A stretch of DNA of 64,000 nt, from the NCBI GenBank assembly GCA_037379345.1, contig CM074515.1, forward strand, positions 26,288,001 to 26,352,000, read 5' to 3'. The stretch's first letter is position 1. Each line of letters begins with the position of its first letter. Shown piece after piece: positions 5,314-55,907 of the stretch. The position numbers and the translations under genes are program-made. This stretch comes from Perna viridis (taxonomy: Eukaryota). Under the pieces are notes generated by a model that saw only the letters and a list, made by a program, of their open reading frames with translations, had not been told where the DNA came from and did no database searches.

Positions 5314-5511
5314 CAGTGAAACATGTCTAAACCAAACCCTGGTTAAACTGGTAACCTGTTCTGGTTCAACTGGTAACCTGTGTAAACCAATCATCATATG
5401 AAGTCCTTTTGTATCAGTTTCAATATTTTTTAACTTGTTTAAAGCAAATATCTGCCTGGACCAAACAAACATCTCTGTCTAAAAGAGGTTTGGTTAAGAC
5501 AGTTTTCACTG
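5314..5511. mobile_element. Tc1/mariner-type MITE (TA target site)
   Basis: ta|cagtgaaacatgtctaaaccaaacc ... ggtttggttaagacagttttcactg|ta. A related, more decayed copy lies at about 30331-30496. Confidence 0.7.
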
Positions 5512-9849: not shown

Positions 9850-12800
9850 ATGGAGAAAAGTCAGTACTGCACATGTGAAACATGTGTAACGCTATCCAAA
9901 CACGGAACTGGTAGGGATAATATTGAGAATCTGATGAGAGAAATTCAAAACGTGAAGACTGAAAATGACTTTTTGAAAGAATACCTTGTTACAGTCAGAA
10001 ACAACGCAACTCTGAAAACTGCCAACGCCCTAACGTCTATTTTGGTGTGGTCTGATAGACAACTATGCCAAAGATTCAAAGGTCTGTATTTCATTGGACA
10101 GAGTTTGTACTTACCACTTATACAGTGCGTTGATTTCACGCATCATTGGTTTACAGTTGTTGATACAAGACTGTTTATTTTAGTCTTGAACATCTTGGAA
10201 ATCCATAGGTGCCAACGTCGCCTGACAAGTCATCATTGATGGATTAGAATGCGACAGAGGCACTCGTAGGATTATGATGATGATTCTGGTAGGGTCAGAT
10301 CCACTTTCTTTTCTTTTCTCGGTTGAATGTAAGCATGGCCCAAAACATCGTAATTTTTTAGACTTTGTTTTGTTTTCACTATTTTTTTTTTTCAAATTGC
10401 AACACATTTTCTGGTTCAAAGCATTCTTTTTGCACATAAAATTCAGTTTGTGAATACATGGGTTCTGCGATTTTCGCCTCTTGTAATGCTCTCGAATTGG
10501 GCTCAAAATTTTCTGTTGGCTTGTCAGATTTATTCTGGTCAAACAAATATCTGTTGTAATGCTTTTTAATGCTTTCCAGATGTTTTCACAAATCTAGGAA
10601 CGGAAAGTATTCAACAAGGCAATAGTGTATTTTCATCAATGTCAGCCCCAAAAACGTCAGAGCAAAGTCATATTTCAGCATCCTACAGAAATGAAGCGGC
10701 CGTGCTGATTCCTCGTAAGAAAATACCCTCGCCGATTCAGCAACATGCACAATCCAATCGACCACCCTCACCAAGTATTGTAAGTTACAGCAATCAACAA
10801 AACATATCAATACCAAGTGCACAATATGAACCAAGACCCTTTTCGTCCTATACTGGTATTAGTGGACAAAGATCGCCAACTGTTACTTATCAGCAGACTG
10901 CAGAAGACCATGCATTTAGACCAGTCTCCTCTCCGCCTCAAACGGATCGATGGAATCAAGTAGTTGCCAAATCTGGGGTCTGTTCTCCTTCGCCAATTCA
11001 ACAAAGCAATGTGAAAATGGGAAATGTTGTCTCCCAAGCTGTGGAATACAACAGAAAGTCGCAGATAGCCAATCAATCGACTCTCACCAACCAACAAACT
11101 GTGGCGGATAATGTGTTTCGACCAGTCTCACCACCTCGTTCGGAGCAATGGAGTCAGTCGATTAACAATGTGAAGGTTCATTCACCATCACCAAATCAAC
11201 AAAGAGAAGTAGTATCTGAAGCTGTGAATTACAACCAACAACCTCAAATAGTAAACTTTTCACCGCAACATGTAAACCACACATATAGTGGACAGCGATC
11301 TCCAATTCACCATCATACTGCAAGGCCCGCGGCTTTGAGTTTGAGTGATCCATATCAACACGCCTATCATTCAACTTCGACAAAAACCACAAAGATAGTC
11401 TCTCCAACATTTGGACAAAGCACTAGACAAATGTCGCCATCATTACAAGGTTCCCCTGAGTTTGGGGGTTCGTACAGACAACCCTCACCAACCAATTCAA
11501 GTTCTCCTGTAAGGTTGTCCTTCCAACAAACATCTGTAAACAGTCCTACTTCGTATCAAAGTGCTCTTGGTGCAAAAAGATCTGAAATGATCTCCGATGA
11601 TTGGAAAACACTCGTCTATCAGCCACCTGAAATGATAGTATCAAACCGCAGTGGGCATAAGGCTGATGTCAGTGGTTTGTCAGGTAAAAAGTCCATGAGT
11701 GAGGGTTACGGAAGCCACATAGAGACTGAACAGTATGATTCTTATTTAAGCGATGGAAGGGCCAGAATTGGAGACCCAGTTTATACATCGACCCCAAACA
11801 AAACCAGTTCTAAAGGTTTTAACGTCATACAAGGTGAGGTATTTTATGCGGTAATAAAAAAATATCAGCTCAATGTTCATTTAAAAGGATTGCAGTAATA
11901 GCAAATAACGACCTGATCATGATATACCACTAACCAAATTAATTTGTAGTACTGGATTACATTCTTTTGATTACCGCTATAACCTTGGTTCCTTTGATTA
12001 CTTTTTGTAAATAGCTATCCATTTTCTCCCTTTGCAACGTTTAAAAGGTCATATTTTTTAGGTCAAAATAGAAAAGAATTTAGTAAAATAAGTCAAACTG
12101 AGCAAATATCCACAATTATAGTTAATTAGTGTTTTCAGAAGCATTTTGTCTCAACAACAAAAACATTTTGCCAATATCAGAATACTTCAAATTTCTGAAA
12201 AGAAATGTAGAAAATAAATAACACCCCTAAAGAAAGAGTAATCAAGGGAACCAAGGTTATAGCGGTATTCAAAAGAATGTAATCCAGGGACAAAGACCAG
12301 ACATGGAAAAAAGACATACACAACAAAGAACATAAAGTAACTAAAATCATACGAAGTAACAAAAGCAAATGAGCAACTCGGACTACACTAAAAACTGGGA
12401 GCATGGACCAGGTGCACCGGTAAGGTAAGCATCCTCTGCTTTTCTAGAAACACCCATCACACATAAAAACACACAATGAGAGATAATAAATGCAATACCA
12501 TTTAATTTATCAATTTGCATATCCTAGTCGCATTAATAGGATAGACACAGATTAGACCAAAGACGAAATTAAAAAAAAATACTATGATAATTTCCAATGC
12601 AACAGTCAAAATTAGACTGAATGTGCCAAAATAACCTTGTGGGAAAATCATCAAAGTAATTGCAAGTAACTAAAATATTAGCAGGTCTATAAAACAAGCT
12701 GTAGTGTTTGCTTGCCTTGCCAGGTTGTTATCATGTTAGCCACACAAGAAGTTGGCATATCTAATCTACCCATTTGACATGTTTTTTTTTCTGTTTTTTT

Positions 12801-31935: not shown

Positions 31936-34900
31936 ATGGATAGCCAGTATAATGTGGACTCCACACAACAAACCACAACTAGTTCCAGTCAGGATGTTGG
32001 ACTAGACAAGATTTATATGAAATCAATAGATTCCATCTTAAAAATTGCTGAAATGGTAATTTGACTGTAGATGCAGTGACTTTTAAGGTTCATTATTACC
32101 TTTCGAAAATTGGCCTCAATTTCACCACTAATTTCTGTCTGACTACAGACAACCCTATGTATGTAGAAGAATTTTAAGGCATAGCATCCCCTACATATGA
32201 GAAAGTTGCATTCATTTTATGTAAAATTATATCAAAAACTGGCCTGACCTTTACTGTTTTAATTTTATCAATTCTGCAGAGAGGGCAAAAATGAACTAAG
32301 TTTAGATAATGTTATGAGATGTTCCCTGTGTATTAAAGGTAAACTGTATTCACATTGGCATGCTGGTTGACAGAAGGACAATAGCCACCTATACACAAAA
32401 GGTGACTTAAACTGTGTTAATGAGTGTACCATATCTAGTAAATCTCAGGTGTTCGTTTATTATTGCACTCTCTGCAGAATTGAAAAAATCAACCCTGTTT
32501 TTGATTTAATTTTACATAAACTTGATGTAAATTTTTCGTATCTAAGAGATGCCACGCCTTAATTTTTTGCTAGATGCACGAGGCCATTTTGTCAGAAAGT
32601 GATGATGAACCTTAAGGAATTATTCAAATATTCTGGACTTCGATTTTACATTTTTAATACTTGTGATAATCTATCTCCACCAGCAAGATTAATTTAGATG
32701 CAGAATATTACTTTAAGAATATCTTAAAAATGATTTCTAGTAGATTTGCTTATACATGTAATATCTTTAAAATTTTAACCTATTTCAAGTTTATATTTAT
32801 TTGCCAAATCACCATAACTAGATAACTAATGTCTGTTTATATGATGAATTATGCCTCTTCCATAGAACACTTTAAAATGGTAGTTCCTGTACCTCTCTTT
32901 ATCATGTGACATATGATAGAAAGAGAGTGAGGGATGGTTTGCTCAGAGTCAGAATGATAAGTAGGTGGCATGCCTTGATGTTGCTTCTTTGAGCTAGCAC
33001 ATGAATTACTTGGCTCAGCATGTTGGTCTAATAGAAATGAGGATTTTAACTTTATAAAATATCTGTCAATGAACATTTAACTGTGATCATTCAATTAACC
33101 TTGAGTTACGAAAATGACAAAGGCCTTACTGGGATCGTTTAAGATAGTACCGGTACAAGTTTTTATATGGTACTTTAAGTATGAGGTAGCCTCTAGTAGG
33201 ACATACTCTGACTGAGTTCTTCTGTCAGGTATCTCTAAGACTGGGCTTTGCTACCTCTATCTACTAACAGACATACTAACAGAATCATGTAAGGGGCAGT
33301 CATGCAAGATCCGTAAGGATAGTCAAGACTGTAAAAACCCCCACAGAAGAATGTATCTTAGTAGTATGCATTTACATTTTACATCTTCTTAAAATAGTAT
33401 TTTGGTAATATTTTTCAGGTTTTAAGTCTGATTGTATTCATCTGTGTGACATCTCACCCAGGCTACAGCTATATTGGTGGAGGATGGGTCCAGTTTGTCA
33501 GTATATCCTGTCTAATCACTGTGTTGATACTGTGGATCTTCTTCATGCTTAGGATCATTTATAAACTTCCAGGACCATGGCAGCTGATTGTAAGTTTGAT
33601 CTGGGTGCCTATTAAATTGATCAAAGTTATTATACCCTACACTTTGTGGAAGGTATATAGTGATCAAGATGTCTCAGAGTCAGAATAATGTGTCTGTGTT
33701 TGATGACATACTTACCTGTGGGAGTCACTTCGCTTGTTCAGTCAATAAAAAAGAACAGCTCAGCATGTTGGACTACTAAAAAACAGGGTCTTTTCCATGA
33801 ATCATGCATTCTTTTTATGAAATATTTGCCATGGGATGTTAAGCCACAATGAATCAATCCATAGTAGAGTGGTGAAACTTTGCATAAATATCATTTACCA
33901 TTGGTATGTACATTATGTATGTTGCAATGAATGCCCTAATCTGTAGGTCAAATTCTAGGTTTATATATCAAAAGCCTTTACGAATGACTATCTTTTATTT
34001 GGTCTACATGTATATTCACCAGAGTTACAATTAATGTCCCTATCTGTCAAGAAACTCAAATCAGACAACACAGTCCTTAGAGAAGTTTTCATCTTCAGGT
34101 CTCCCTAACAACTTCTAATGTTTCCACTACTTTACATGTTAAAATAGTAATTTTCAAAGTTTCTCTGTAATTTCCCAGGGCAAATGATGCCTTAAAAGTT
34201 CATACCATTGTGAAGAGTGAAGAACAAGGGTTTCAAAATCACTATACTTATGGTAAAATGATTGTAGAAAGTTTTTCTTAAAATTAATTGGAATAAAAAT
34301 ACTGAAAATTCACAATTTGTACTTTTTCTTCTAACTGATAGCATGGAAGCAAATTACTCACACGTTAAAAATATTCATATACTTTAATTTTAAAGTACCC
34401 CTTCTCAGCTTTATTTTGGCTACTTTTGATCAACTTATACATAATTTGGATAGATATAGGTTCAGTTTGTTTTGGTACTGCATAGAGTGGTGGCCATATG
34501 ACCTGAAAATGGTAATTGAGACTCCATATCCTTTAGTTTCATAAGTTATTATACCCCTAGGGATTTTTTAGATGATTTTAAATTATAAGTCTGTCTATTT
34601 GCCTGCCCATCTATCTTGTTAGTGTAAGTCCTCCTGAAGCACTGAATGGATTTTCATAATTCCTGCGAATTTCAAAGGATGATTAGGAATCATATGTAGA
34701 TACACATGAATTTGCCTGCAAGGTGAGATAATCTAACATAAGGATTTTGAGATATTCACGAAAAGAGAGAAAAAAATGTTAGGTGTCATGCAAAGATGTC
34801 TGTGAAAAAAAAGATACTAGTAAGTGCTTTCAGATGCCTGCAATGGGAAATAATCAAATATCAAGACTGATATTTAAGGAGTCCATGTTGACCAAGGGGC

Positions 34901-37900
34901 CCAAGGGGTTATTCTTTTTGGTAGCTTGCTCACAATATGTCTTTTTTTTCTACAGGAAGTACACTTATAGATCTCAATAATCAACTTTCAATTTCAGATC
35001 CTGATATACCACATCGTATATACTTTATTTTATATTATATCGTTCCTGGTTTGTGCTATTCAAGGTGGAAAGTACCAAGAAAGTGATGGGTTAATTGCAG
35101 GAGCAGTAAGTTCTTGCGTTTCTCATCTAGGATGGATAACACATGCTATTAATTTTTTTTTTGCTTGTAATAAAGTGTTACTACAGTAATTATTTTGATT
35201 TCTATTTTCAGCTTGAACAAATAACCCATGTGGCTTATTTAGACTAATCCTAACAATAAGGTTTTATTTATTTTCAGATTATGATATACTATATAGTATA
35301 TGTTGTGTTTTATCTTATTTCTTTCCTGGTTTGTGCCATACAAGCCGGGAATTGGTATCCAAATGGTGGTTTAATCGCAGGAGCTGTAAGTCTATGTAAT
35401 TTTTCATATCCCTTGCAAAGTTACCAATTTTTTGCATGGGTAGTTTCACCTTTCAAGTTTGCTTACAAAGAATCAATGTTCGAGACTTTACTTTAACCTC
35501 CCCCTGCCAGTCTGCAAGCTGACTTTTTAGTTGGACAAAAGTTTTCTAGTTTAAAGATACTTTTTTTAAAGATTTTACATATTATGGAGAAAATGCTTGT
35601 CCTTTGACAATTTCTAGAAAACCAAAATATTTTAACAATATACTAGCTCTACGTTTATGATCAATTCCATAATTACCAAATCATGCAGTGCTACAGCTTG
35701 ATCAAGCAGTGTGGTAAAAGTTTAGTATTTAGTACAAGTCTTTGTAATAATCAGGCAAATTGTGAAAAATTAGAAACATGCATGTCAAGAACTAAACCAT
35801 CTGACAGTATACTTTCACTCCAAGGAGTCTTCTATATTTGAAATGACTACTATTTTATCTCTGCTTGACTGAATATGTTTGGAAATTTTTCTTTAGAATG
35901 TTAATAATAGAGATTTTGATAGAGTTAACTGCCCTTGGAATGTTTATTTGCAGTGCATCTCAATGAAATTATAACTGACTTCACCAAATGATATAGAAAT
36001 TCCTTGATTCTGATTGTAGAAATAGTCGTATAATTCAGTTAGGCACTGACCATTTTTATACTGGGGGTATTATTTTGAAAAAAATACATGTATTTGAAAT
36101 TTGAGCCAAAAACATATTTTACTATACCATGGACAGACAAAAAATTTATTCAATATTTCCCCTTTTACTTGACAATGTTGATTTTAAAATAAAATTCTTT
36201 AAATCTGGCTGCTGCAGAAAAAAAATTTCCAACTCAACATCTCAGGCCCACCCACTTCTGGAGAAGAAAATAGTCTTTTCCTTCGAGTTGTAGATTATTT
36301 CTACCTAGTTTAAACCAATGCCTGATTCTTACAGAGGCTGACACTTCAAAAAGTTATATTCAGTTTCATAAAGTCTCAAGCATTGATAGTGCATTTAAAA
36401 AGCCTTGCAAAAACCACCCTCTTGTACTTTTCTGAATATTAAGTCATAGGGCAACCTCCTATATTATTATCATTACTAAATGTGAAACAAGTTCAATAGA
36501 TGAGCATTGAGAAAACTATATATTTTTTTAGAAACTTCATAAAAAATTAAGAACCGGCATATGAAAGTCTACCAGGAAATTCATATGCAGCTATTTATAC
36601 GAATAGAAACAAAAATCATAACAGATGTAATCATATTTCAGAATTTATAATAGATGGACAGATAATAGATATTTTGTATGTATTTATAATACATGTACTA
36701 GGAAGTTTTCTATTCCTTAATATGCCATTATATTCATCTTTTCCTGTTAGAAATAGTGATTTCAAAACTCATTGCTACATTATTACAACTTTAAAGGTCA
36801 ACTTTTTTATAAAGTTAATAAGTTACAATCTGACATACATGGCATGATAAATGTATGTAACAAGAAATACTTTAAACAGTAATTAGTGTATAAAAATGTA
36901 TTTGTATTCAGATTGAACAAAACCAATTTATGTATACATGTGTTTTCTATCTATGAAAAATTTTTTCACTACTTTTTTCCATTTTGTTCAGGACTCATAA
37001 ACACTGCTGGAATCAGGTGAAGACTTAGAGTTGGAAAATTTTTCAATTTAATGCAAAATTTGCACAATGAGGAGAAAATTATAGCTTTGAACTTTCCCAA
37101 ATTTTTATAAATTTCTGGATATGACTTGTCATAAATATTTAATGTCGGTACTCTGTCAGAGAAATAAGTTTTAAAATTACAGCCTTAATATTTATGATTT
37201 ATTAAAGAATAAAAAATAGCAATGAGTTCTGATTTTACTGTAGTTTCTTTCTTTGCTTGTAGTTGTTATATATAGAAAGTTGAAAATATTGCATGCTCTA
37301 TTGTGTTTGTAGATTTTAGTTTGTAGTTTATGGTGTTCTGTATCTTATATCAGTTATAGTATGTCTTGTTCAGTCTAGCAAAGTATCTTATTCTGGAGGT
37401 TTTATCGCTGGTGGTGTAAGTAACTAACGGTTATAACTACTTAACATTCCTAATGAAATAAATTTTAATAATTCACACTGTGAAATAACTTATGTAATTT
37501 TGATCTCAGACTTTCTCCCACCAAAACGTCACACTTTGATATCAAGCCGCCAATCACAGAATTAAAAATTCATGTTGACAATATCGACAAATTATGAAGA
37601 AAATCTATAATCTAAGATAGAATAATCATTTGGTTACTGTGAATAATGATATTTAGATATTCATTCTTTCGAATAATTATATTCCTATCAATAATAACAT
37701 TTACTGTTTGTTTACTAATGAATATATCTTGTAAGATTTATTCTAAACCCACCAAGTTTTCACTACGACTATAATGATAAACAATACTAAAAACTACAGA
37801 CTATACTAGCTAATTAACTATCTGATCCTTTCTCTTTCTTGTGAGGAAAAGGAGTTGTGATGAAAAATAAATTTAAGTGTCAGAATAATCATTTGTCAAG

Positions 37901-51728: not shown

Positions 51729-52489
51729 CCATTATTACGACACTGTTTGTGAGTTACACAGGTGAACATCTGGCAGTTGTGTTGGTTTATTCTAATTTGG
51801 ATAATGCATTTCTGATGCTTTATATACTAGACCATCATCTAAAATGAACTAGCAGTTGATTTATGTGATAATCCTTGAACAGTTGCAAAAGGTACGAATT
51901 TATGTTAGGCCGAATTGACCCATTTGCATTCACAATTTGAGTTGTTTAGCTCCCTGGTGTAAGGTACCCTCATTACTACCCATGCCCTTCTCTTTTTGGT
52001 GAGAATCTCTTCATGGGTTAGGCCGCTTTTGTCTGAATAGACTGACCATGTTAATGTTATTAAATGATACGTTAAACTTGTTAAATGTTTTTTTACTAGA
52101 TAAAGAAACACATTTTATAAACCTTTGTTTTCTTTAGGTTAGTTTTTAAATTTAAGTTGCTAATATTGTTATCAACTTCTTGCATTCTTAATTTCTATAA
52201 ATTTGCGTATGATTTGCAAAAGTTTATATTACTACTCCACATTAATCTGCTTATCAGTGCCATGTTTAATGTCATAACTTCATATTTCAGGCTTTATACG
52301 AGATCAAAATATACCTCTAAAATATCATACGCACGTTCTATGTATAATTTTTGCTTGTATGAGAATGGGAAGTTTACATTAAATGATGATATAATAGGTT
52401 AGCATTGAACATTACCCAATTTCCCATTCAGACACAGCTAGGGGCTCGTTACAATTGAATATATAGGTCATATATACATTATTAGCACC

Positions 52490-52491
<2 letters not shown>

Positions 52492-52576
<85 letters not shown>
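52492..52576. repeat. (AT)n microsatellite
   Basis: About 42 uninterrupted AT units. Confidence 0.98.
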
Positions 52577-52578
<2 letters not shown>

Positions 52579-54839
52579 CCATTGCCATTTCTTTAATATG
52601 TTCCTAATCTGGTTCTCGGGTCAATATCTACTAATTTACATAAAATTACAAGTTACTCTCAAATTTTGAACACCCAAATATTGCTGAAAATTTGAGAGTA
52701 ATTTGTGGAATGAAAACATTACCTGCACTTCCTTGTAACCGATTGTTTTGATCGTAAACCATTCAGGTAATCATGGTTACAAAAGAGTAATCATATCAAG
52801 GGAACCATGATTCTAGTGGAAGTCACTCATTTGTAGAGCATATGGCATTCATGTTGAAAGCAAGCCAAAACCAGTTGCATAAAATATTTGATTATTAGTG
52901 ACTTTGAAGACTTCAGTCTTTGATTTTTATGAATCGTCAGAGTCTCATTAAAAGGGCTGAGTATTGAAAAAAAAATACTGATGTATACAATTGTATACAG
53001 CATATATGTTAACCTTGGAAAATTCATAAACAGGAGGTCTCCGTCTCAAAATTTTCTCAAAGTGAGAGATTTGCTGAGGTTTTGTGTTTGAACATGTTTT
53101 ATGTTCAGCAACAGACCTTATTTGAACTTACACAAATGTATATAGTGGGTTTACCCCATCCTGGCGGTCAAAATATTAAGCCTCCAATAAAAATTCAAAA
53201 AAAAAAATTTATGGACATGTTTTGTTTCTACACACATACCCTGGATATACTTCTATTAAATGTCAAAAAAATATTATGATTGTAAATGCTGACAGACTCA
53301 ACGAATGGATGAATGACAAGTGACATGGGCCACCATTATTGTTTTTGTTTAACCTGGTTCAGGTGCAAAGGTGAAATTCATGGTCATGTGTGCATTTAAT
53401 TATCATCTGATTTTAGTGAGGAATGTCTCCTACAAAGCAGATAATCAGTACAGTTTGTTTATTTTAGGTTGAAAATCGATATTAAAATAGGAATCTTATT
53501 TTGAATTCATACACAGATTTTGTAGGGTGAACAGTAAATCACAATGGTGAATTTATATTCTGAACAATTGACCTTATATGGAATGTTGAGCTGATTTGAG
53601 TATGTTAGTAAACACCTCTTGACCTAACCTTGATGAAGTATGATCCACACTGTCAGGCCTTATTCTTCTTTCACAAAAAATGTCCAAATTTGTGATTGCA
53701 CCAAAAGCAGGCTAAACCACTATATTCAATTTCAATGTGACAATTTCTTGTGACATCTCTGACAGATGACAAGCAATGTTTTCCTCCACTTGAATGATAG
53801 TAAATTAAATTATCTTCTCAGAGGATCGATAGGTTTTGACATGAATTTGTTTTTTTTTAGGATTTTAAGTTGAACATTCATTTTAGATGGTCATGTAAGA
53901 GGGAGACTGTTGAATATTGATTTTTTTTTAAGAAGTATTTCATATTTTACATTACATAAGAGTTCTTAGTAGCCTTAATATTATTTTAATTGCATAAATG
54001 TGCAACAGTTGGACTTATATTAAGAAGTCTTAATTATGTCTTTTAGTTTGGGAATTGCTATGGGAATTTACTGAGCACCTTTCTAGTATAAGACAACTCA
54101 GAAATGGATTTTTTTTCAGTTTTTCCATGATAAGTTTACACAGTAGTATTTTTTCGTTTTGTCAAACTTTATTTAGGAGACAATTGTTTAGGCCATCAAT
54201 TTAATAGTGTTAATTTCAGAGAGTGAGAGAAAAAAGAACAATATGGAAGTTCCTGATTTAGGGTAGGGAGTGTAAACAGTTATATTTCCATAAATTTGTA
54301 AAAGAATGTTGCTTAATAACATGGCACAGCTCTGTAGGTCTTTTCACCTAAGTAGAGGGTTGGACAGCTAAGGAGGTAGAATATAGGGGGTTGGGAGGTG
54401 GGAGAAAATAAATGTAAAATATGTTTCAAAAGGAAGGAAAAAACTACAGTCTAATCAAAAATGTGAATTGTTGCAAATTAATTCCAAAAGATTTTTAAAT
54501 GAAATATATAATTTTTCTCAAATACTGTTAATAGGAAACAGATAGTCTGGATTATCTGTCTTTTTTTTTCTATATCTTTTGAAGAATTTTTTTCAGGGTG
54601 GGTGATTGTGAGGTTGAAGGTGGTACCCCCCTTTTCTACCCCCTCATAGTAAATTTTAACCAAAATTAATTTTGAATAGCAAACCTAGTGCTCAAAGTTA
54701 TATATGGCAGCAAATTGGACTTAAGGGAGATACATGTAATTTAAATGCATTAGGATAGTAATAAACTTGCATCATTGATTTGCCAACTTGAGAAAAATAT
54801 GTTCTGCTTTTTCAGTTGTTTATGTTGGTAACTTAACAA

Positions 54840-55907
54840 ATGGCTGCAGCAATCTTAAGTAACAAGGAACAGACGACTTCAATTCGAGCAAAAGCCCAGA
54901 AGGAAGGTAAGGGGAAGAATGAAAAAGGAACAAAACCCAAAGTGAAAAATGTTTTAATGCCCCTTACACAGAAATCAATACTTAAGCTAGAGCATGATGT
55001 AGAAGATAATATTTCTACTAAGTTAAAAGAATGTTTAGCTAAATTTTCTGTTCCTAAGAAAATTAGCAAAAAACAGACAGATGAAGAAAAGGAAGCCATC
55101 ATAGATAGGAAAAAACTGTTACGTTCGCAGATAGTATTTGGTGTAAATAATGTTACTAAATCTTTAGAGAAGGACCTGTTACGGCTAGTATTAACATGTT
55201 CAACTGCTGATCCACCAATATTGACTAAACATCTGGTTGAATTAGCTACCACAAGAAACTGTGTTGCAATCTGTATGAACAATTTGAATGATATTTTAAT
55301 GAATATAGTTAGCTTTCGATCTGTAGCTATTGGGTTTTTGAAACCAACAGAGAATATGGCAAATGATTTTGGAGACTTTGTTCAGTCTGTTAATTCTGTA
55401 GCACCAAAGTTTTGGCAAGATGGAAATGAAAGCACTGGAATTTTAGTGTCCCAAAATAAGGACCCTGACAGTGAAGTAAAGGTTCGTTCTACAACAGAAA
55501 AAGCAGAGACTTCAAATTTAGAAAACATTAAAACCGAGACTACAAATTCTGAAAAACACAAAAGTATGGAAACCATCGAAAAAGAAGATAGTGACATCTG
55601 TGATGAAAATGAGAGTAACAATTTGGAAAATTTAGCAGACTCAAAACAGGAAAGTGAACCAGAGGACTTCTCTAGATTTTATGTTTTTAAGAAAGACTTA
55701 CCAGCATCATCTCTAGTTCCAGATTTCATTCCATTTATGTCAGATTCTGATGCAGAATCAGAGGAGGAAGTACATGTAGAAACAAAAAGACCCAGGCTTA
55801 TTAAAGAATTGGAGGAGTATAAATCTGTCAATGTAGGGAAAATGAGACACAATGAAAACAAGAACAAATCTAAAAAGAAGAAGCTAAAGAAGAAAAGTCG
55901 AAATTAG
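54840..55907 (+). CDS. RPP38: Ribonuclease P/MRP protein subunit p38-like (L7Ae domain), single coding exon
   Basis: 355-aa ORF with LRSQIVFGVNNVTKSLEKDLLRLVLTC..ADPPILTKHLVELATTRN...SVAIGF (L7Ae/RPP38-type), an acidic linker and a lysine-rich C-terminus. Splice acceptor at 54815 before the ATG; AATAAA at 55911. Confidence 0.85.
   Translation: MAAAILSNKEQTTSIRAKAQKEGKGKNEKGTKPKVKNVLMPLTQKSILKLEHDVEDNISTKLKECLAKFSVPKKISKKQTDEEKEAIIDRKKLLRSQIVFGVNNVTKSLEKDLLRLVLTCSTADPPILTKHLVELATTRNCVAICMNNLNDILMNIVSFRSVAIGFLKPTENMANDFGDFVQSVNSVAPKFWQDGNESTGILVSQNKDPDSEVKVRSTTEKAETSNLENIKTETTNSEKHKSMETIEKEDSDICDENESNNLENLADSKQESEPEDFSRFYVFKKDLPASSLVPDFIPFMSDSDAESEEEVHVETKRPRLIKELEEYKSVNVGKMRHNENKNKSKKKKLKKKSRN

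What the first reader, a model, noticed from the sequence alone, without database searches (positions are those of the whole stretch)
34998..37415. Cassette of three homologous, probably mutually exclusive exons that swaps the second extracellular loop of a MARVEL tetraspan protein
Seen: between constitutive exons 2 and 4 lie three ungapped-homologous phase-0 exons, each with a GTAAGT donor (3A 34998-35105, 3B 35278-35385, 3C about 37313-37415). The TM3 core (Y-x-I-S-x-x-V-C-x-x-Q) and the IAG end are conserved, while the loop differs: GGKYQESDG, AGNWYPNGG, SSKVSYSGG. One exon gives a 185-aa four-helix protein. Known: MARVEL proteins have four TM helices with cytosolic termini, so this loop faces outward. 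Inference: including two exons would add a helix and flip the C-terminus without a frameshift, so an active exclusion mechanism is needed. The cassette would give isoforms with different outer surfaces, a small Dscam-like switch. I do not know of this being described for this family, but I cannot search the literature.
Basis: partly seen in the sequence, partly recalled or inferred. Interest (0 to 1): 0.82.

Follow-up and report, generated by a model that had tools for sequence, protein, structure and literature searches.

The report
Alternative exon-3 cluster in mussel MARVEL gene
A small four-helix membrane protein gene of a mussel carries three tandem copies of the exon for its third helix and outer turn; RNA shows two of them used one at a time, which is a real but ordinary kind of alternative splicing that genome annotation already shows for the same gene in Mytilus.

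Summary
Three homologous phase-0 exons lie between exon 2 (33419-33589) and the last coding exon (44737-44895) of a 185-aa MARVEL-type gene. They are 3A (34998-35105), 3B (35278-35385) and 3C (in frame only from 37320, to 37415). All have AG acceptors and GTAAGT donors.

- **RNA evidence:** in transcript contigs of four public runs, exon 2 is spliced to 3B in all four and to 3A in two. Each 3A or 3B contig carries one copy only. No junction to 3C was listed.
- **3C:** it groups with a "c-type" exon that Mytilus RefSeq models use as isoform X2. In this genome its 5' end is damaged. The ancestral acceptor now gives a frameshift, and only an AG 7 nt downstream keeps the frame, four codons shorter.
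- **Age and selection:** oyster, limpet and three M. trossulus paralogs have a single exon 3, so the cluster is mytilid-specific. The helix part is under purifying selection (pN/pS about 0.2-0.3) and the outer turn is nearly unconstrained (0.6-1.0).
- **Mechanism:** no docking/selector RNA pairing was found, so how the copies exclude each other is unknown.
- **Precedent:** vertebrate MARVELD3 has homologous alternative exons.

The scan has noted other exon pairs of this kind in other genes of this genome. I rate it a new member of a known kind, of modest interest.

The parts
31936..32055 (+). Coding part of the first coding exon (40 aa, Met to ...KIAEM). The exon itself starts at about 31898, after an AG; the donor is GTAATT.
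   Evidence: tblastn of Mytilus homologues, sequence, translation. A 3847-nt transcript contig extends 158 nt upstream of exon 2.
33419..33589 (+). Constitutive exon 2 (57 aa): TM1, the first outer loop, TM2 and the KLPGPW cytosolic turn.
   Evidence: Sequence. Transcript contigs of all four runs cover 33418-33589. 100% identical in protein to the Mytilus orthologue except the last residues.
34998..35105 (+). Exon 3A (36 codons, loop GGKYQESDG), an alternative copy.
   Evidence: GT..AG joint 33589->34998 in runs X6 (depth 37.9) and X10 (14.6). The 166-nt contigs are 28 nt of exon 2, 108 nt of 3A and 30 nt beginning GT.
35278..35385 (+). Exon 3B (36 codons, loop AGNWYPNGG), the default copy.
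   Evidence: GT..AG joint 33589->35278 in all four runs (depth 87, 80, 82, 23). A 3847-nt contig carries exon 1, exon 2, 3B and 3.4 kb downstream.
37320..37415 (+). Exon 3C (32 codons, loop SSKVSYSGG). It is the c-type copy with a shifted acceptor. Its use is not shown.
   Evidence: Translation and in-frame TAG at 37317-19. Groups with the Mytilus X2 exons at 93/93 support. 70% nt identity to M. edulis while the introns are unalignable. No junction listed.
44737..44895 (+). Last coding exon (52 aa plus stop): the rest of TM4 and the cytosolic tail ending ...YETRTQY.
   Evidence: Sequence, tblastn. The tail is conserved across molluscs.
38572..42210 (-). Fragments of a retroelement inside the 7.3-kb intron between 3C and the last exon. 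Not part of the gene's function.
   Evidence: ORFs with an integrase-core hit and a PNMA/gag-like hit. The same intron is about 2.6 kb in M. californianus.

Best explanation
The gene is the only copy in this genome of a small mollusc MARVEL protein that RefSeq calls plasmolipin-like or CMTM-like. In the mussel lineage its third coding exon was duplicated in tandem. That exon codes for most of TM3, a turn of 4-9 residues on the outer face, and the first residues of TM4.

- An old duplication gave an a-type and a c-type copy, which this genome shares with Mytilus.
- This genome has two a-type copies, 3A and 3B, where Mytilus has one. Whether the second arose after the split from Mytilus or was lost there is unresolved.

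The spliceosome joins exon 2 to one copy and that copy to the last exon. 3B is the default. 3A is chosen in a sizeable share of transcripts in some samples. The result is 185-aa isoforms that differ at 12 of 36 positions, half of them in the outer turn: charged K/E/D in 3A, aromatic and uncharged in 3B.

3C is the conserved c-type copy, but its 5' end is shortened. It is at best a minor isoform here.

**Shown:** the exons, their homology, the 3A and 3B junctions, single inclusion in assembled transcripts, conservation, and the pattern of constraint.

**Inferred:** that the choice is regulated by tissue or state; that exclusion is imposed by trans-acting factors or splice-site competition rather than by long-range RNA pairing; and that the isoforms differ in partner or lipid interactions at the outer leaflet.
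For: - Exons and homology.
- Junctions 33589->35278 in 4 of 4 runs and 33589->34998 in 2 of 4, all GT..AG. The 3A and 3B contigs are equal-length 166-nt 'bubble' contigs with the same flanks. No 35105->35278 joint is among those listed.
- MARVEL family: the orthologues pass Pfam PF01284. There are four hydrophobic segments. The AF2 model of the orthologue P0067 has helices 33-53, 56-85, 96-124 and 129-164, and its best fold matches are synaptogyrin and synaptophysin.
- Single gene in the genome.
- M. californianus and M. edulis loci hold an a-type and a c-type exon 1.1 kb apart, used in RefSeq isoforms X1 and X2.
- Oyster, Lottia and three M. trossulus paralogs have one exon 3.
- Exon tree: mytilid copies form one clade (95/91) and 3C groups with the c-type exons (93/93).
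- Nei-Gojobori counts: 3A against 3B gives pN/pS 0.18 for the helix part and 0.85 for the loop. 3C against the Mytilus c-type gives 0.31 for the helix part.
Against: - All RNA evidence comes from assembled contigs of runs whose RNA nature is a guess. Contigs drop rare forms, so rare double inclusion, rare skipping and low-level 3C use cannot be excluded.
- Seven joints were not displayed.
- Absence of 3A from two runs may reflect tissue, depth or genotype.
- No mechanism of exclusion was found. The 172-nt intron between 3A and 3B looks normally spliceable, and double inclusion is in frame, so nonsense-mediated decay cannot police it.
- The window's own joined protein was not scanned against Pfam; the single exons gave no hit.
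Confidence: 0.75

Rival explanations
1. One reading: all three exons, 3C included, are used in a regulated and strictly mutually exclusive way, giving three surface variants.
For: - 3C keeps an open frame of 32 codons, a GTAAGT donor and an AG that restores the frame.
- It is still alignable to Mytilus while the introns are not.
- Its helix part has pN/pS of about 0.31.
- Its Mytilus counterpart is in RefSeq isoform X2 of three species.
Against: - No 3C junction in four runs, and a contig of run X1 runs unbroken across 36957-37600.
- The ancestral acceptor AG at 37311-12 lies upstream of the rescuing AG and gives a frameshift with a stop inside the exon.
- The c-type protein clusters of Mytilus hold only predicted NCBI entries and no transcript-assembly members, whereas the a-type clusters do. 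So it is minor even there.
Confidence: 0.2
2. 3B is the only functional form. 3A inclusion is splicing noise or a difference between individuals, and 3A and 3C are duplicates on their way to decay.
For: 3B is present in all runs and is the deeper form wherever both occur. 3A is absent from the contigs of two runs.
Against: - 3A reaches about 30-40% of the summed depth of the two forms in runs X6 and X10, which come from two studies.
- 3A and 3B differ at 53% of synonymous sites but only 10% of non-synonymous sites in the helix part. Both copies therefore stayed under protein-level selection after duplication.
- Both keep perfect splice sites.
Confidence: 0.1
3. Assembly artefact: 3A and 3B are two haplotypes of one exon placed side by side.
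For: Mussel genomes are highly heterozygous (own knowledge).
Against: - The copies are only 73% identical in DNA.
- They lie 172 nt apart, each with its own splice sites.
- Both are held by independent DNA and RNA runs.
- The Mytilus loci also have a multi-copy cluster.
Confidence: 0.01

Closest known systems
RefSeq isoforms X1/X2 of the Mytilus 'plasmolipin-like / CMTM7- or CMTM8-like' gene (M. californianus XP_052059625 and XP_052059627; M. edulis XP_071175316 and XP_071175320; M. galloprovincialis XP_076110583 and XP_076110585)
   Same: Same gene family, same exon and same phase-0 boundaries. The two isoforms are identical except for the 36-37 residues of exon 3. The window's 3C groups with their X2 exon.
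   Different: There are two copies there and three here. These are automatic annotations, and I found no paper on them. In this genome the c-type copy has a shortened 5' end.
Vertebrate MARVELD3 exons E3a/E3b (Steed et al. 2009; Abascal et al. 2015, PMC4494069)
   Same: A MARVEL-domain protein with homologous, alternatively used exons. In that paper some lineages carry the two exon types in two separate genes instead of one spliced gene. Whether Mytilus paralogs do the same is untested speculation (see the section on the most novel reading).
   Different: There each alternative exon encodes the whole C-terminal half, including the complete four-helix domain. Here an internal 108-nt exon swaps one helix and one turn. 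It is a different subfamily and an independent origin.
Tandem-exon-duplication substitutions in membrane proteins, e.g. sodium-channel exon 5a/5b (PMC12772994, PMC9741552, PMC8373072)
   Same: Equal-length, same-phase tandem copies that encode a membrane helix plus the adjoining loop and are used one at a time.
   Different: Those are ancient and are documented functionally. This one is confined to mussels and its function is untested.
Dscam1 exon clusters with docking-site/selector RNA competition (PMC1397879, PMC4835542)
   Same: A tandem array of alternative exons with single inclusion.
   Different: There are 2-3 copies here rather than dozens. No docking or selector complementarity stood above shuffled controls.

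Membership tests
MARVEL domain proteins (Pfam PF01284) | Match to the MARVEL profile above the curated cut-off | tested here: inconclusive
Single exons of the window gave no hit; pieces of 32-57 aa are too short. The orthologues P0067, P0077 and P0049 and the relatives P0002 and P0028 pass at 37.6-59.1 bits against a cut-off of 32.8. The c-type isoform P0050 scores 32.5, just under it. The window's exon 2 matches these orthologues: 84% identity over residues 42-109 of P0049 in a six-frame match that runs into the intron, and identical residues apart from one near its end by reading.
MARVEL domain proteins (Pfam PF01284) | Four transmembrane helices with a short turn between TM3 and TM4 | tested here: met
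   Kyte-Doolittle scan of the model built from the window: segments at about 33-55, 66-84, 97-115 and 127-145. AF2 model of the orthologue: helices 33-53, 56-85, 96-124 and 129-164.
MARVEL domain proteins (Pfam PF01284) | Fold like solved MARVEL proteins | tested here: met
   The best Foldseek matches of the orthologue model are synaptogyrin 8a6m (E 8.7e-3, TM 0.54/0.63) and synaptophysin 9b8o_U. The match is weak but they are the top two. There was no sequence match to any PDB chain.
MARVEL domain proteins (Pfam PF01284) | Cytosolic N and C termini, so that the TM3-TM4 turn faces outward | not testable with these tools
   This rests on established knowledge of the family (Sanchez-Pulido et al. 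2002, cited in PMC4494069).
Plasmolipin / CMTM subfamily | Orthology to vertebrate PLLP or a given CMTM | not tested
   The names come from RefSeq and vary between species and even between isoforms: plasmolipin-like, CMTM4, CMTM7, CMTM8. No phylogeny with vertebrate members was made.
Mutually exclusive tandem-duplicated exons | Neighbouring exons are homologous, of the same phase and of equal or near-equal length | tested here: met
   3A and 3B are 108 nt each and 3C is 96 nt. All are phase 0. E-values are 1e-13 and 1e-6.
Mutually exclusive tandem-duplicated exons | Each copy is spliced to the same upstream and downstream constitutive exons | tested here: inconclusive
   Met for 3A and 3B upstream (joints to 33589). 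Downstream, both continue with GT and then letters off the stretch, as exon 4 would. Not shown for 3C. Exon 4 lay outside the 4.3 kb that could be laid.
Mutually exclusive tandem-duplicated exons | Only one copy per mRNA | tested here: met
   Every assembled transcript contig holds one copy. No 35105->35278 or 35385->37320 joint is among the 15 listed. Contigs cannot exclude rare co-inclusion.
Mutually exclusive tandem-duplicated exons | Copies kept by selection across species | tested here: met
   The a-type/c-type pair is shared with Mytilus. pN/pS of the helix part is 0.18-0.32. The 3A/3B pair is seen only in this genome.
Docking-site/selector RNA competition (Dscam type) | One intronic site complementary to a site next to each variant, stronger than chance | tested here: not met
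   Best duplexes between the six intron segments have z from -0.86 to +1.08 against shuffles. The 24 inverted repeats in 4.2 kb are short, AT-rich and without pattern. The conserved 15-nt inverted pair of the Mytilus intron is absent here.

The most novel reading that the evidence does not exclude
In mussels the same TM3-plus-outer-turn module may have been multiplied in two interchangeable ways. This genome has alternative exons inside one gene. Mytilus has a tandem array of paralogous genes, and some of those carry a single exon 3 whose loop resembles 3A (KYQE type, P0002) or 3B (N type, P0047 and P0069). That would be a fresh invertebrate case of 'splice isoform separation'. It would point to the nearly unconstrained outer turn as a fast-changing contact surface, for instance with a pathogen, a toxin or a partner protein.
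Probability: 0.15. Interest if true: 0.5.

Novelty: new member of a known kind. Interest (0 to 1): 0.3.

Why it matters
It adds a clean, RNA-supported case of a small tetraspan membrane protein whose third helix and outer turn are swapped by alternative splicing. The cluster is young and lineage-restricted, and it can be compared with tandem gene copies in the sister genus. That makes it a usable model for how exon duplication and gene duplication trade places.

It is also a usable model for how single inclusion is enforced when double inclusion stays in frame, so nonsense-mediated decay cannot police it. It does not open a new kind of mechanism, and nothing is known about what the protein does in molluscs.

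Tried and rejected
- **Pfam on single exons** gave nothing useful.
- **Searching for the first coding exon by an ATG...GTRAG rule** failed because the donor is GTAATT. Homologues found it.
- **A fourth copy:** none in the window and no second gene in the genome.
- **Docking/selector pairing:** inverted repeats and RNAduplex against shuffles (a first run timed out) gave no signal.
- **Steric hindrance:** rejected. The 3A-3B intron is 172 nt. It has branch-point-like CTAAT/CTAAC about 25 nt before the acceptor and several AGs further upstream, so a far-upstream branch point is unlikely.
- **U2/U12 incompatibility:** rejected, because all donors are GTAAGT.
- **Policing by nonsense-mediated decay:** rejected, because all copies are multiples of three.
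- **Conserved intronic elements between this genome and Mytilus:** none beyond about 15 nt at exon edges.
- **P0049 locus look-up** failed, because only one product per gene is on record. P0067 worked.
- **Sequence search of the PDB:** no hit.
- **Organism A's own proteins** are not in the protein collection. I therefore did not spend the third word search on the 3C peptide.
- **Positive selection on the loop:** not supported. pN/pS is at most about 1 on very few sites.

Full report
**1. What is in the sequence**

Reading 34900-35500 and 37200-37500 and translating confirms two 108-nt exons. 3A is 34998-35105 and 3B is 35278-35385. Each follows a pyrimidine tract plus CAG and precedes GTAAGT.

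The third copy ends at 37415, also before GTAAGT. Its frame carries a TAG at 37317-37319. A start at 37313 (after the AG at 37311-12) shifts the frame into a stop inside the exon. Only the AG at 37318-19 gives a productive exon, 37320-37415, with 32 codons.

A tblastn of each exon peptide against the whole window gives 3A-3B at 67% identity (E 1e-13) and 3A/3B-3C at 47-48% (E about 1e-6). There is no further copy.

**2. Gene model**

- The first coding exon was found with Mytilus homologues at 31936-32055. It has 40 codons, a GTAATT donor, and begins at about 31898 after an AG.
- The sum is 185 aa, or 181 aa with 3C.
- I built the joined protein only inside a script from the window file, for a hydropathy scan. 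It shows four hydrophobic segments with one exon 3, five with 3A+3B and three if exon 3 is skipped.
- All searches were exon by exon or with homologues returned by the tools.

**3. Family**

- The single exons are too short for Pfam.
- An HMMER search of exon 2 against 1.8 billion representatives found 41 proteins, mostly 60-210 aa. The full-length ones I scanned match MARVEL PF01284 above threshold.
- A word search gave named relatives. [quoted passage not shown]
- All share the same four coding exons with phase-0 joints and a conserved ...YETRTQY tail.
- An AF2 model of the M. californianus orthologue P0067 has pLDDT 77-93 in the core. It places helices at 33-53, 56-85, 96-124 and 129-164.
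- Exon 3 (residues 100-135) therefore encodes nearly all of TM3, a four-residue turn, and the first turn of TM4.
- Its best fold matches in the PDB are synaptogyrin and synaptophysin, both MARVEL proteins.
- That the turn faces outward follows from the accepted topology of the family and was not tested here.

**4. RNA evidence**

One search for runs and one laying of reads were allowed. The four runs laid come from four studies. They are Logan contigs of about 60-100 Mb, which look like transcriptomes, but their RNA nature is on record only as a guess.

- *3B:* GT..AG joints link 33589 to 35278 in all four runs, at depths 87, 80, 82 and 23.
- *3A:* joints link 33589 to 34998 in two runs, X6 at 38 and X10 at 15.
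- *Bubble contigs:* in X10 the 3A and 3B contigs are both 166 nt, made of 28 nt of exon 2, the 108-nt exon, and 30 nt that begin with GT. This is the shape of a de Bruijn bubble between shared flanks. GT fits the first letters of exon 4 and does not fit 3B (AT) or 3C (TT).
- *Full-length contig:* in X5 a 3847-nt contig carries 158 nt upstream, exon 2, 3B and 3.4 kb downstream with nothing in between.
- *No co-inclusion or 3C junction:* no joint 35105->35278, 35385->37320 or 33589->3C is among the 15 joints listed. Seven weaker ones were not shown.
- *Unspliced 3C:* in X1 a contig of depth 6.8 runs unbroken from 36957 to beyond 37600, across both 3C splice sites.
- *Background depth:* the high depth just after 3C belongs to a repeat.

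The conclusion is that 3A and 3B are both used, one per transcript, with 3B dominant. 3C use is not shown. Contigs cannot show absence.

**5. Comparison with other species**

The window's genome is 723 Mb in 46 contigs and has only this one gene of the type. Exons are about 80% identical in DNA to Mytilus and introns do not align. I take it for a mussel of another genus than Mytilus. I did not try to name it.

- *Mytilus cluster:* in M. californianus (L005) and M. edulis (L006) the orthologous gene has two exon-3 copies 1.1 kb apart, an a-type and a c-type.
- *RefSeq isoforms:* isoforms X1 and X2 of M. californianus, M. edulis and M. galloprovincialis are identical except for this exon. The alternative use is therefore already in public annotation, although the c-type clusters hold only predicted entries.
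- *Single-copy genes:* three tandem M. trossulus paralogs (P0069, P0047 and P0002, within about 80 kb), Ostrea edulis and Lottia gigantea each have a single exon 3.
- *Exon tree:* a tree of 25 exon-3 peptides has few columns and many open forks. It puts all mussel copies in one clade (95/91) and 3C with the Mytilus c-type exons (93/93). 3A and 3B are unresolved among the a-type copies.
- *History:* the a/c duplication predates the split from Mytilus. The 3A/3B duplication is seen only here.
- *3C's damaged end:* where Mytilus c-type exons have 12 nt after the acceptor, the window has 7. That is why the old acceptor is out of frame and the exon is four codons shorter.

**6. Selection**

- Nei-Gojobori counts over whole exons give dN/dS of about 0.2-0.25, both for 3A against 3B and for 3C against the Mytilus c-type exons.
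- When split, the helix codons give pN/pS of 0.18-0.32. The nine loop codons give 0.6-1.0 in the 3A-3B, window-to-Mytilus and c-type comparisons. Two Mytilus paralog pairs ran the other way on very few changes.
- The numbers are small. There is no sign of positive selection, only relaxed constraint on the turn.
- 3C is still alignable at 70% while the neighbouring introns are not. It therefore cannot have been neutral for most of the time since the split.

**7. Mechanism of single inclusion**

- Double inclusion is in frame, so nonsense-mediated decay cannot police it.
- The 172-nt intron between 3A and 3B has an ordinary branch-point region and a strong acceptor, so steric hindrance is unlikely.
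- All donors are U2-type.
- Inverted repeats and best intron-intron duplexes against shuffles (z from -0.9 to +1.1) show no docking/selector design.
- The Mytilus a-c intron holds conserved islands. These include a perfect 15-nt inverted pair (L005 5343-5357 with 5480-5494) and about 125 conserved nt before the c-type exon. Nothing like them is in the window.
- My best guess is competition between the weaker 3A acceptor and the stronger 3B acceptor, modulated by trans-acting factors. This is inference only.

**8. What is known**

The held literature has no paper on alternative exons in plasmolipin- or CMTM-like genes or in this mussel gene. It does describe homologous mutually exclusive exons in vertebrate MARVELD3, which in several lineages were sorted into separate genes (PMC4494069).

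The scan's own notes list many other tandem alternative-exon pairs in other genes of this same genome. These are unchecked by me. They give context only and did not change my scores.

**9. Verdict**

This is a real exon cluster. 3A and 3B are alternative and singly included. 3C is an old copy with a damaged 5' end and no RNA support here. It is a new member of a known kind.

Noticed in passing
window 38572-42210 (- strand): The 7.3-kb intron between 3C and the last exon holds broken ORFs with an integrase-core hit and a PNMA/gag-like hit. These are remains of a retroelement and explain why this intron is about three times longer than in M. californianus.
   Followed up: partly
window 35730-36470 and 37476-37600: Intron stretches with contig depths in the hundreds to thousands and many contigs at 90-95% likeness. 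These are dispersed repeats that blur depth around exon 3C.
   Followed up: no
L005 5293-5372 and 5480-5509; L005 5615-5736: In the Mytilus a-to-c intron, islands stay at 90% identity or more between M. californianus and M. edulis against a 72% background. They include a perfect 15-nt inverted pair and about 125 nt just upstream of the c-type exon. These are candidate splicing control elements.
   Followed up: partly
L011 2828-3024 and L010 2958-3053: M. trossulus paralogs carry partial, stop-containing tandem copies of exon 2 just upstream of the real exon 2. Exon duplication seems frequent in this gene family.
   Followed up: no
window 54840-55907 (+): An ORF of 355 aa with a borderline L7Ae/L30e/Gadd45-family hit (22.6 bits against a cut-off of 22.1). 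It is possibly a single-exon gene.
   Followed up: no
window 10639-11898 (+): An ORF of 419 aa with no Pfam match, in the most GC-rich stretch of the window.
   Followed up: no
window 44866-44892: The cytosolic tail ...TTYETRTQY is almost invariant from limpets to mussels while the Thr/Ser-rich stretch before it varies. It looks like a conserved sorting or binding motif at the C terminus.
   Followed up: no
window 52486-52590: A simple repeat that reads IYIYIY... in translation. It gave spurious weak tblastn matches to the Tyr/Ile-rich exon 3 peptides.
   Followed up: no
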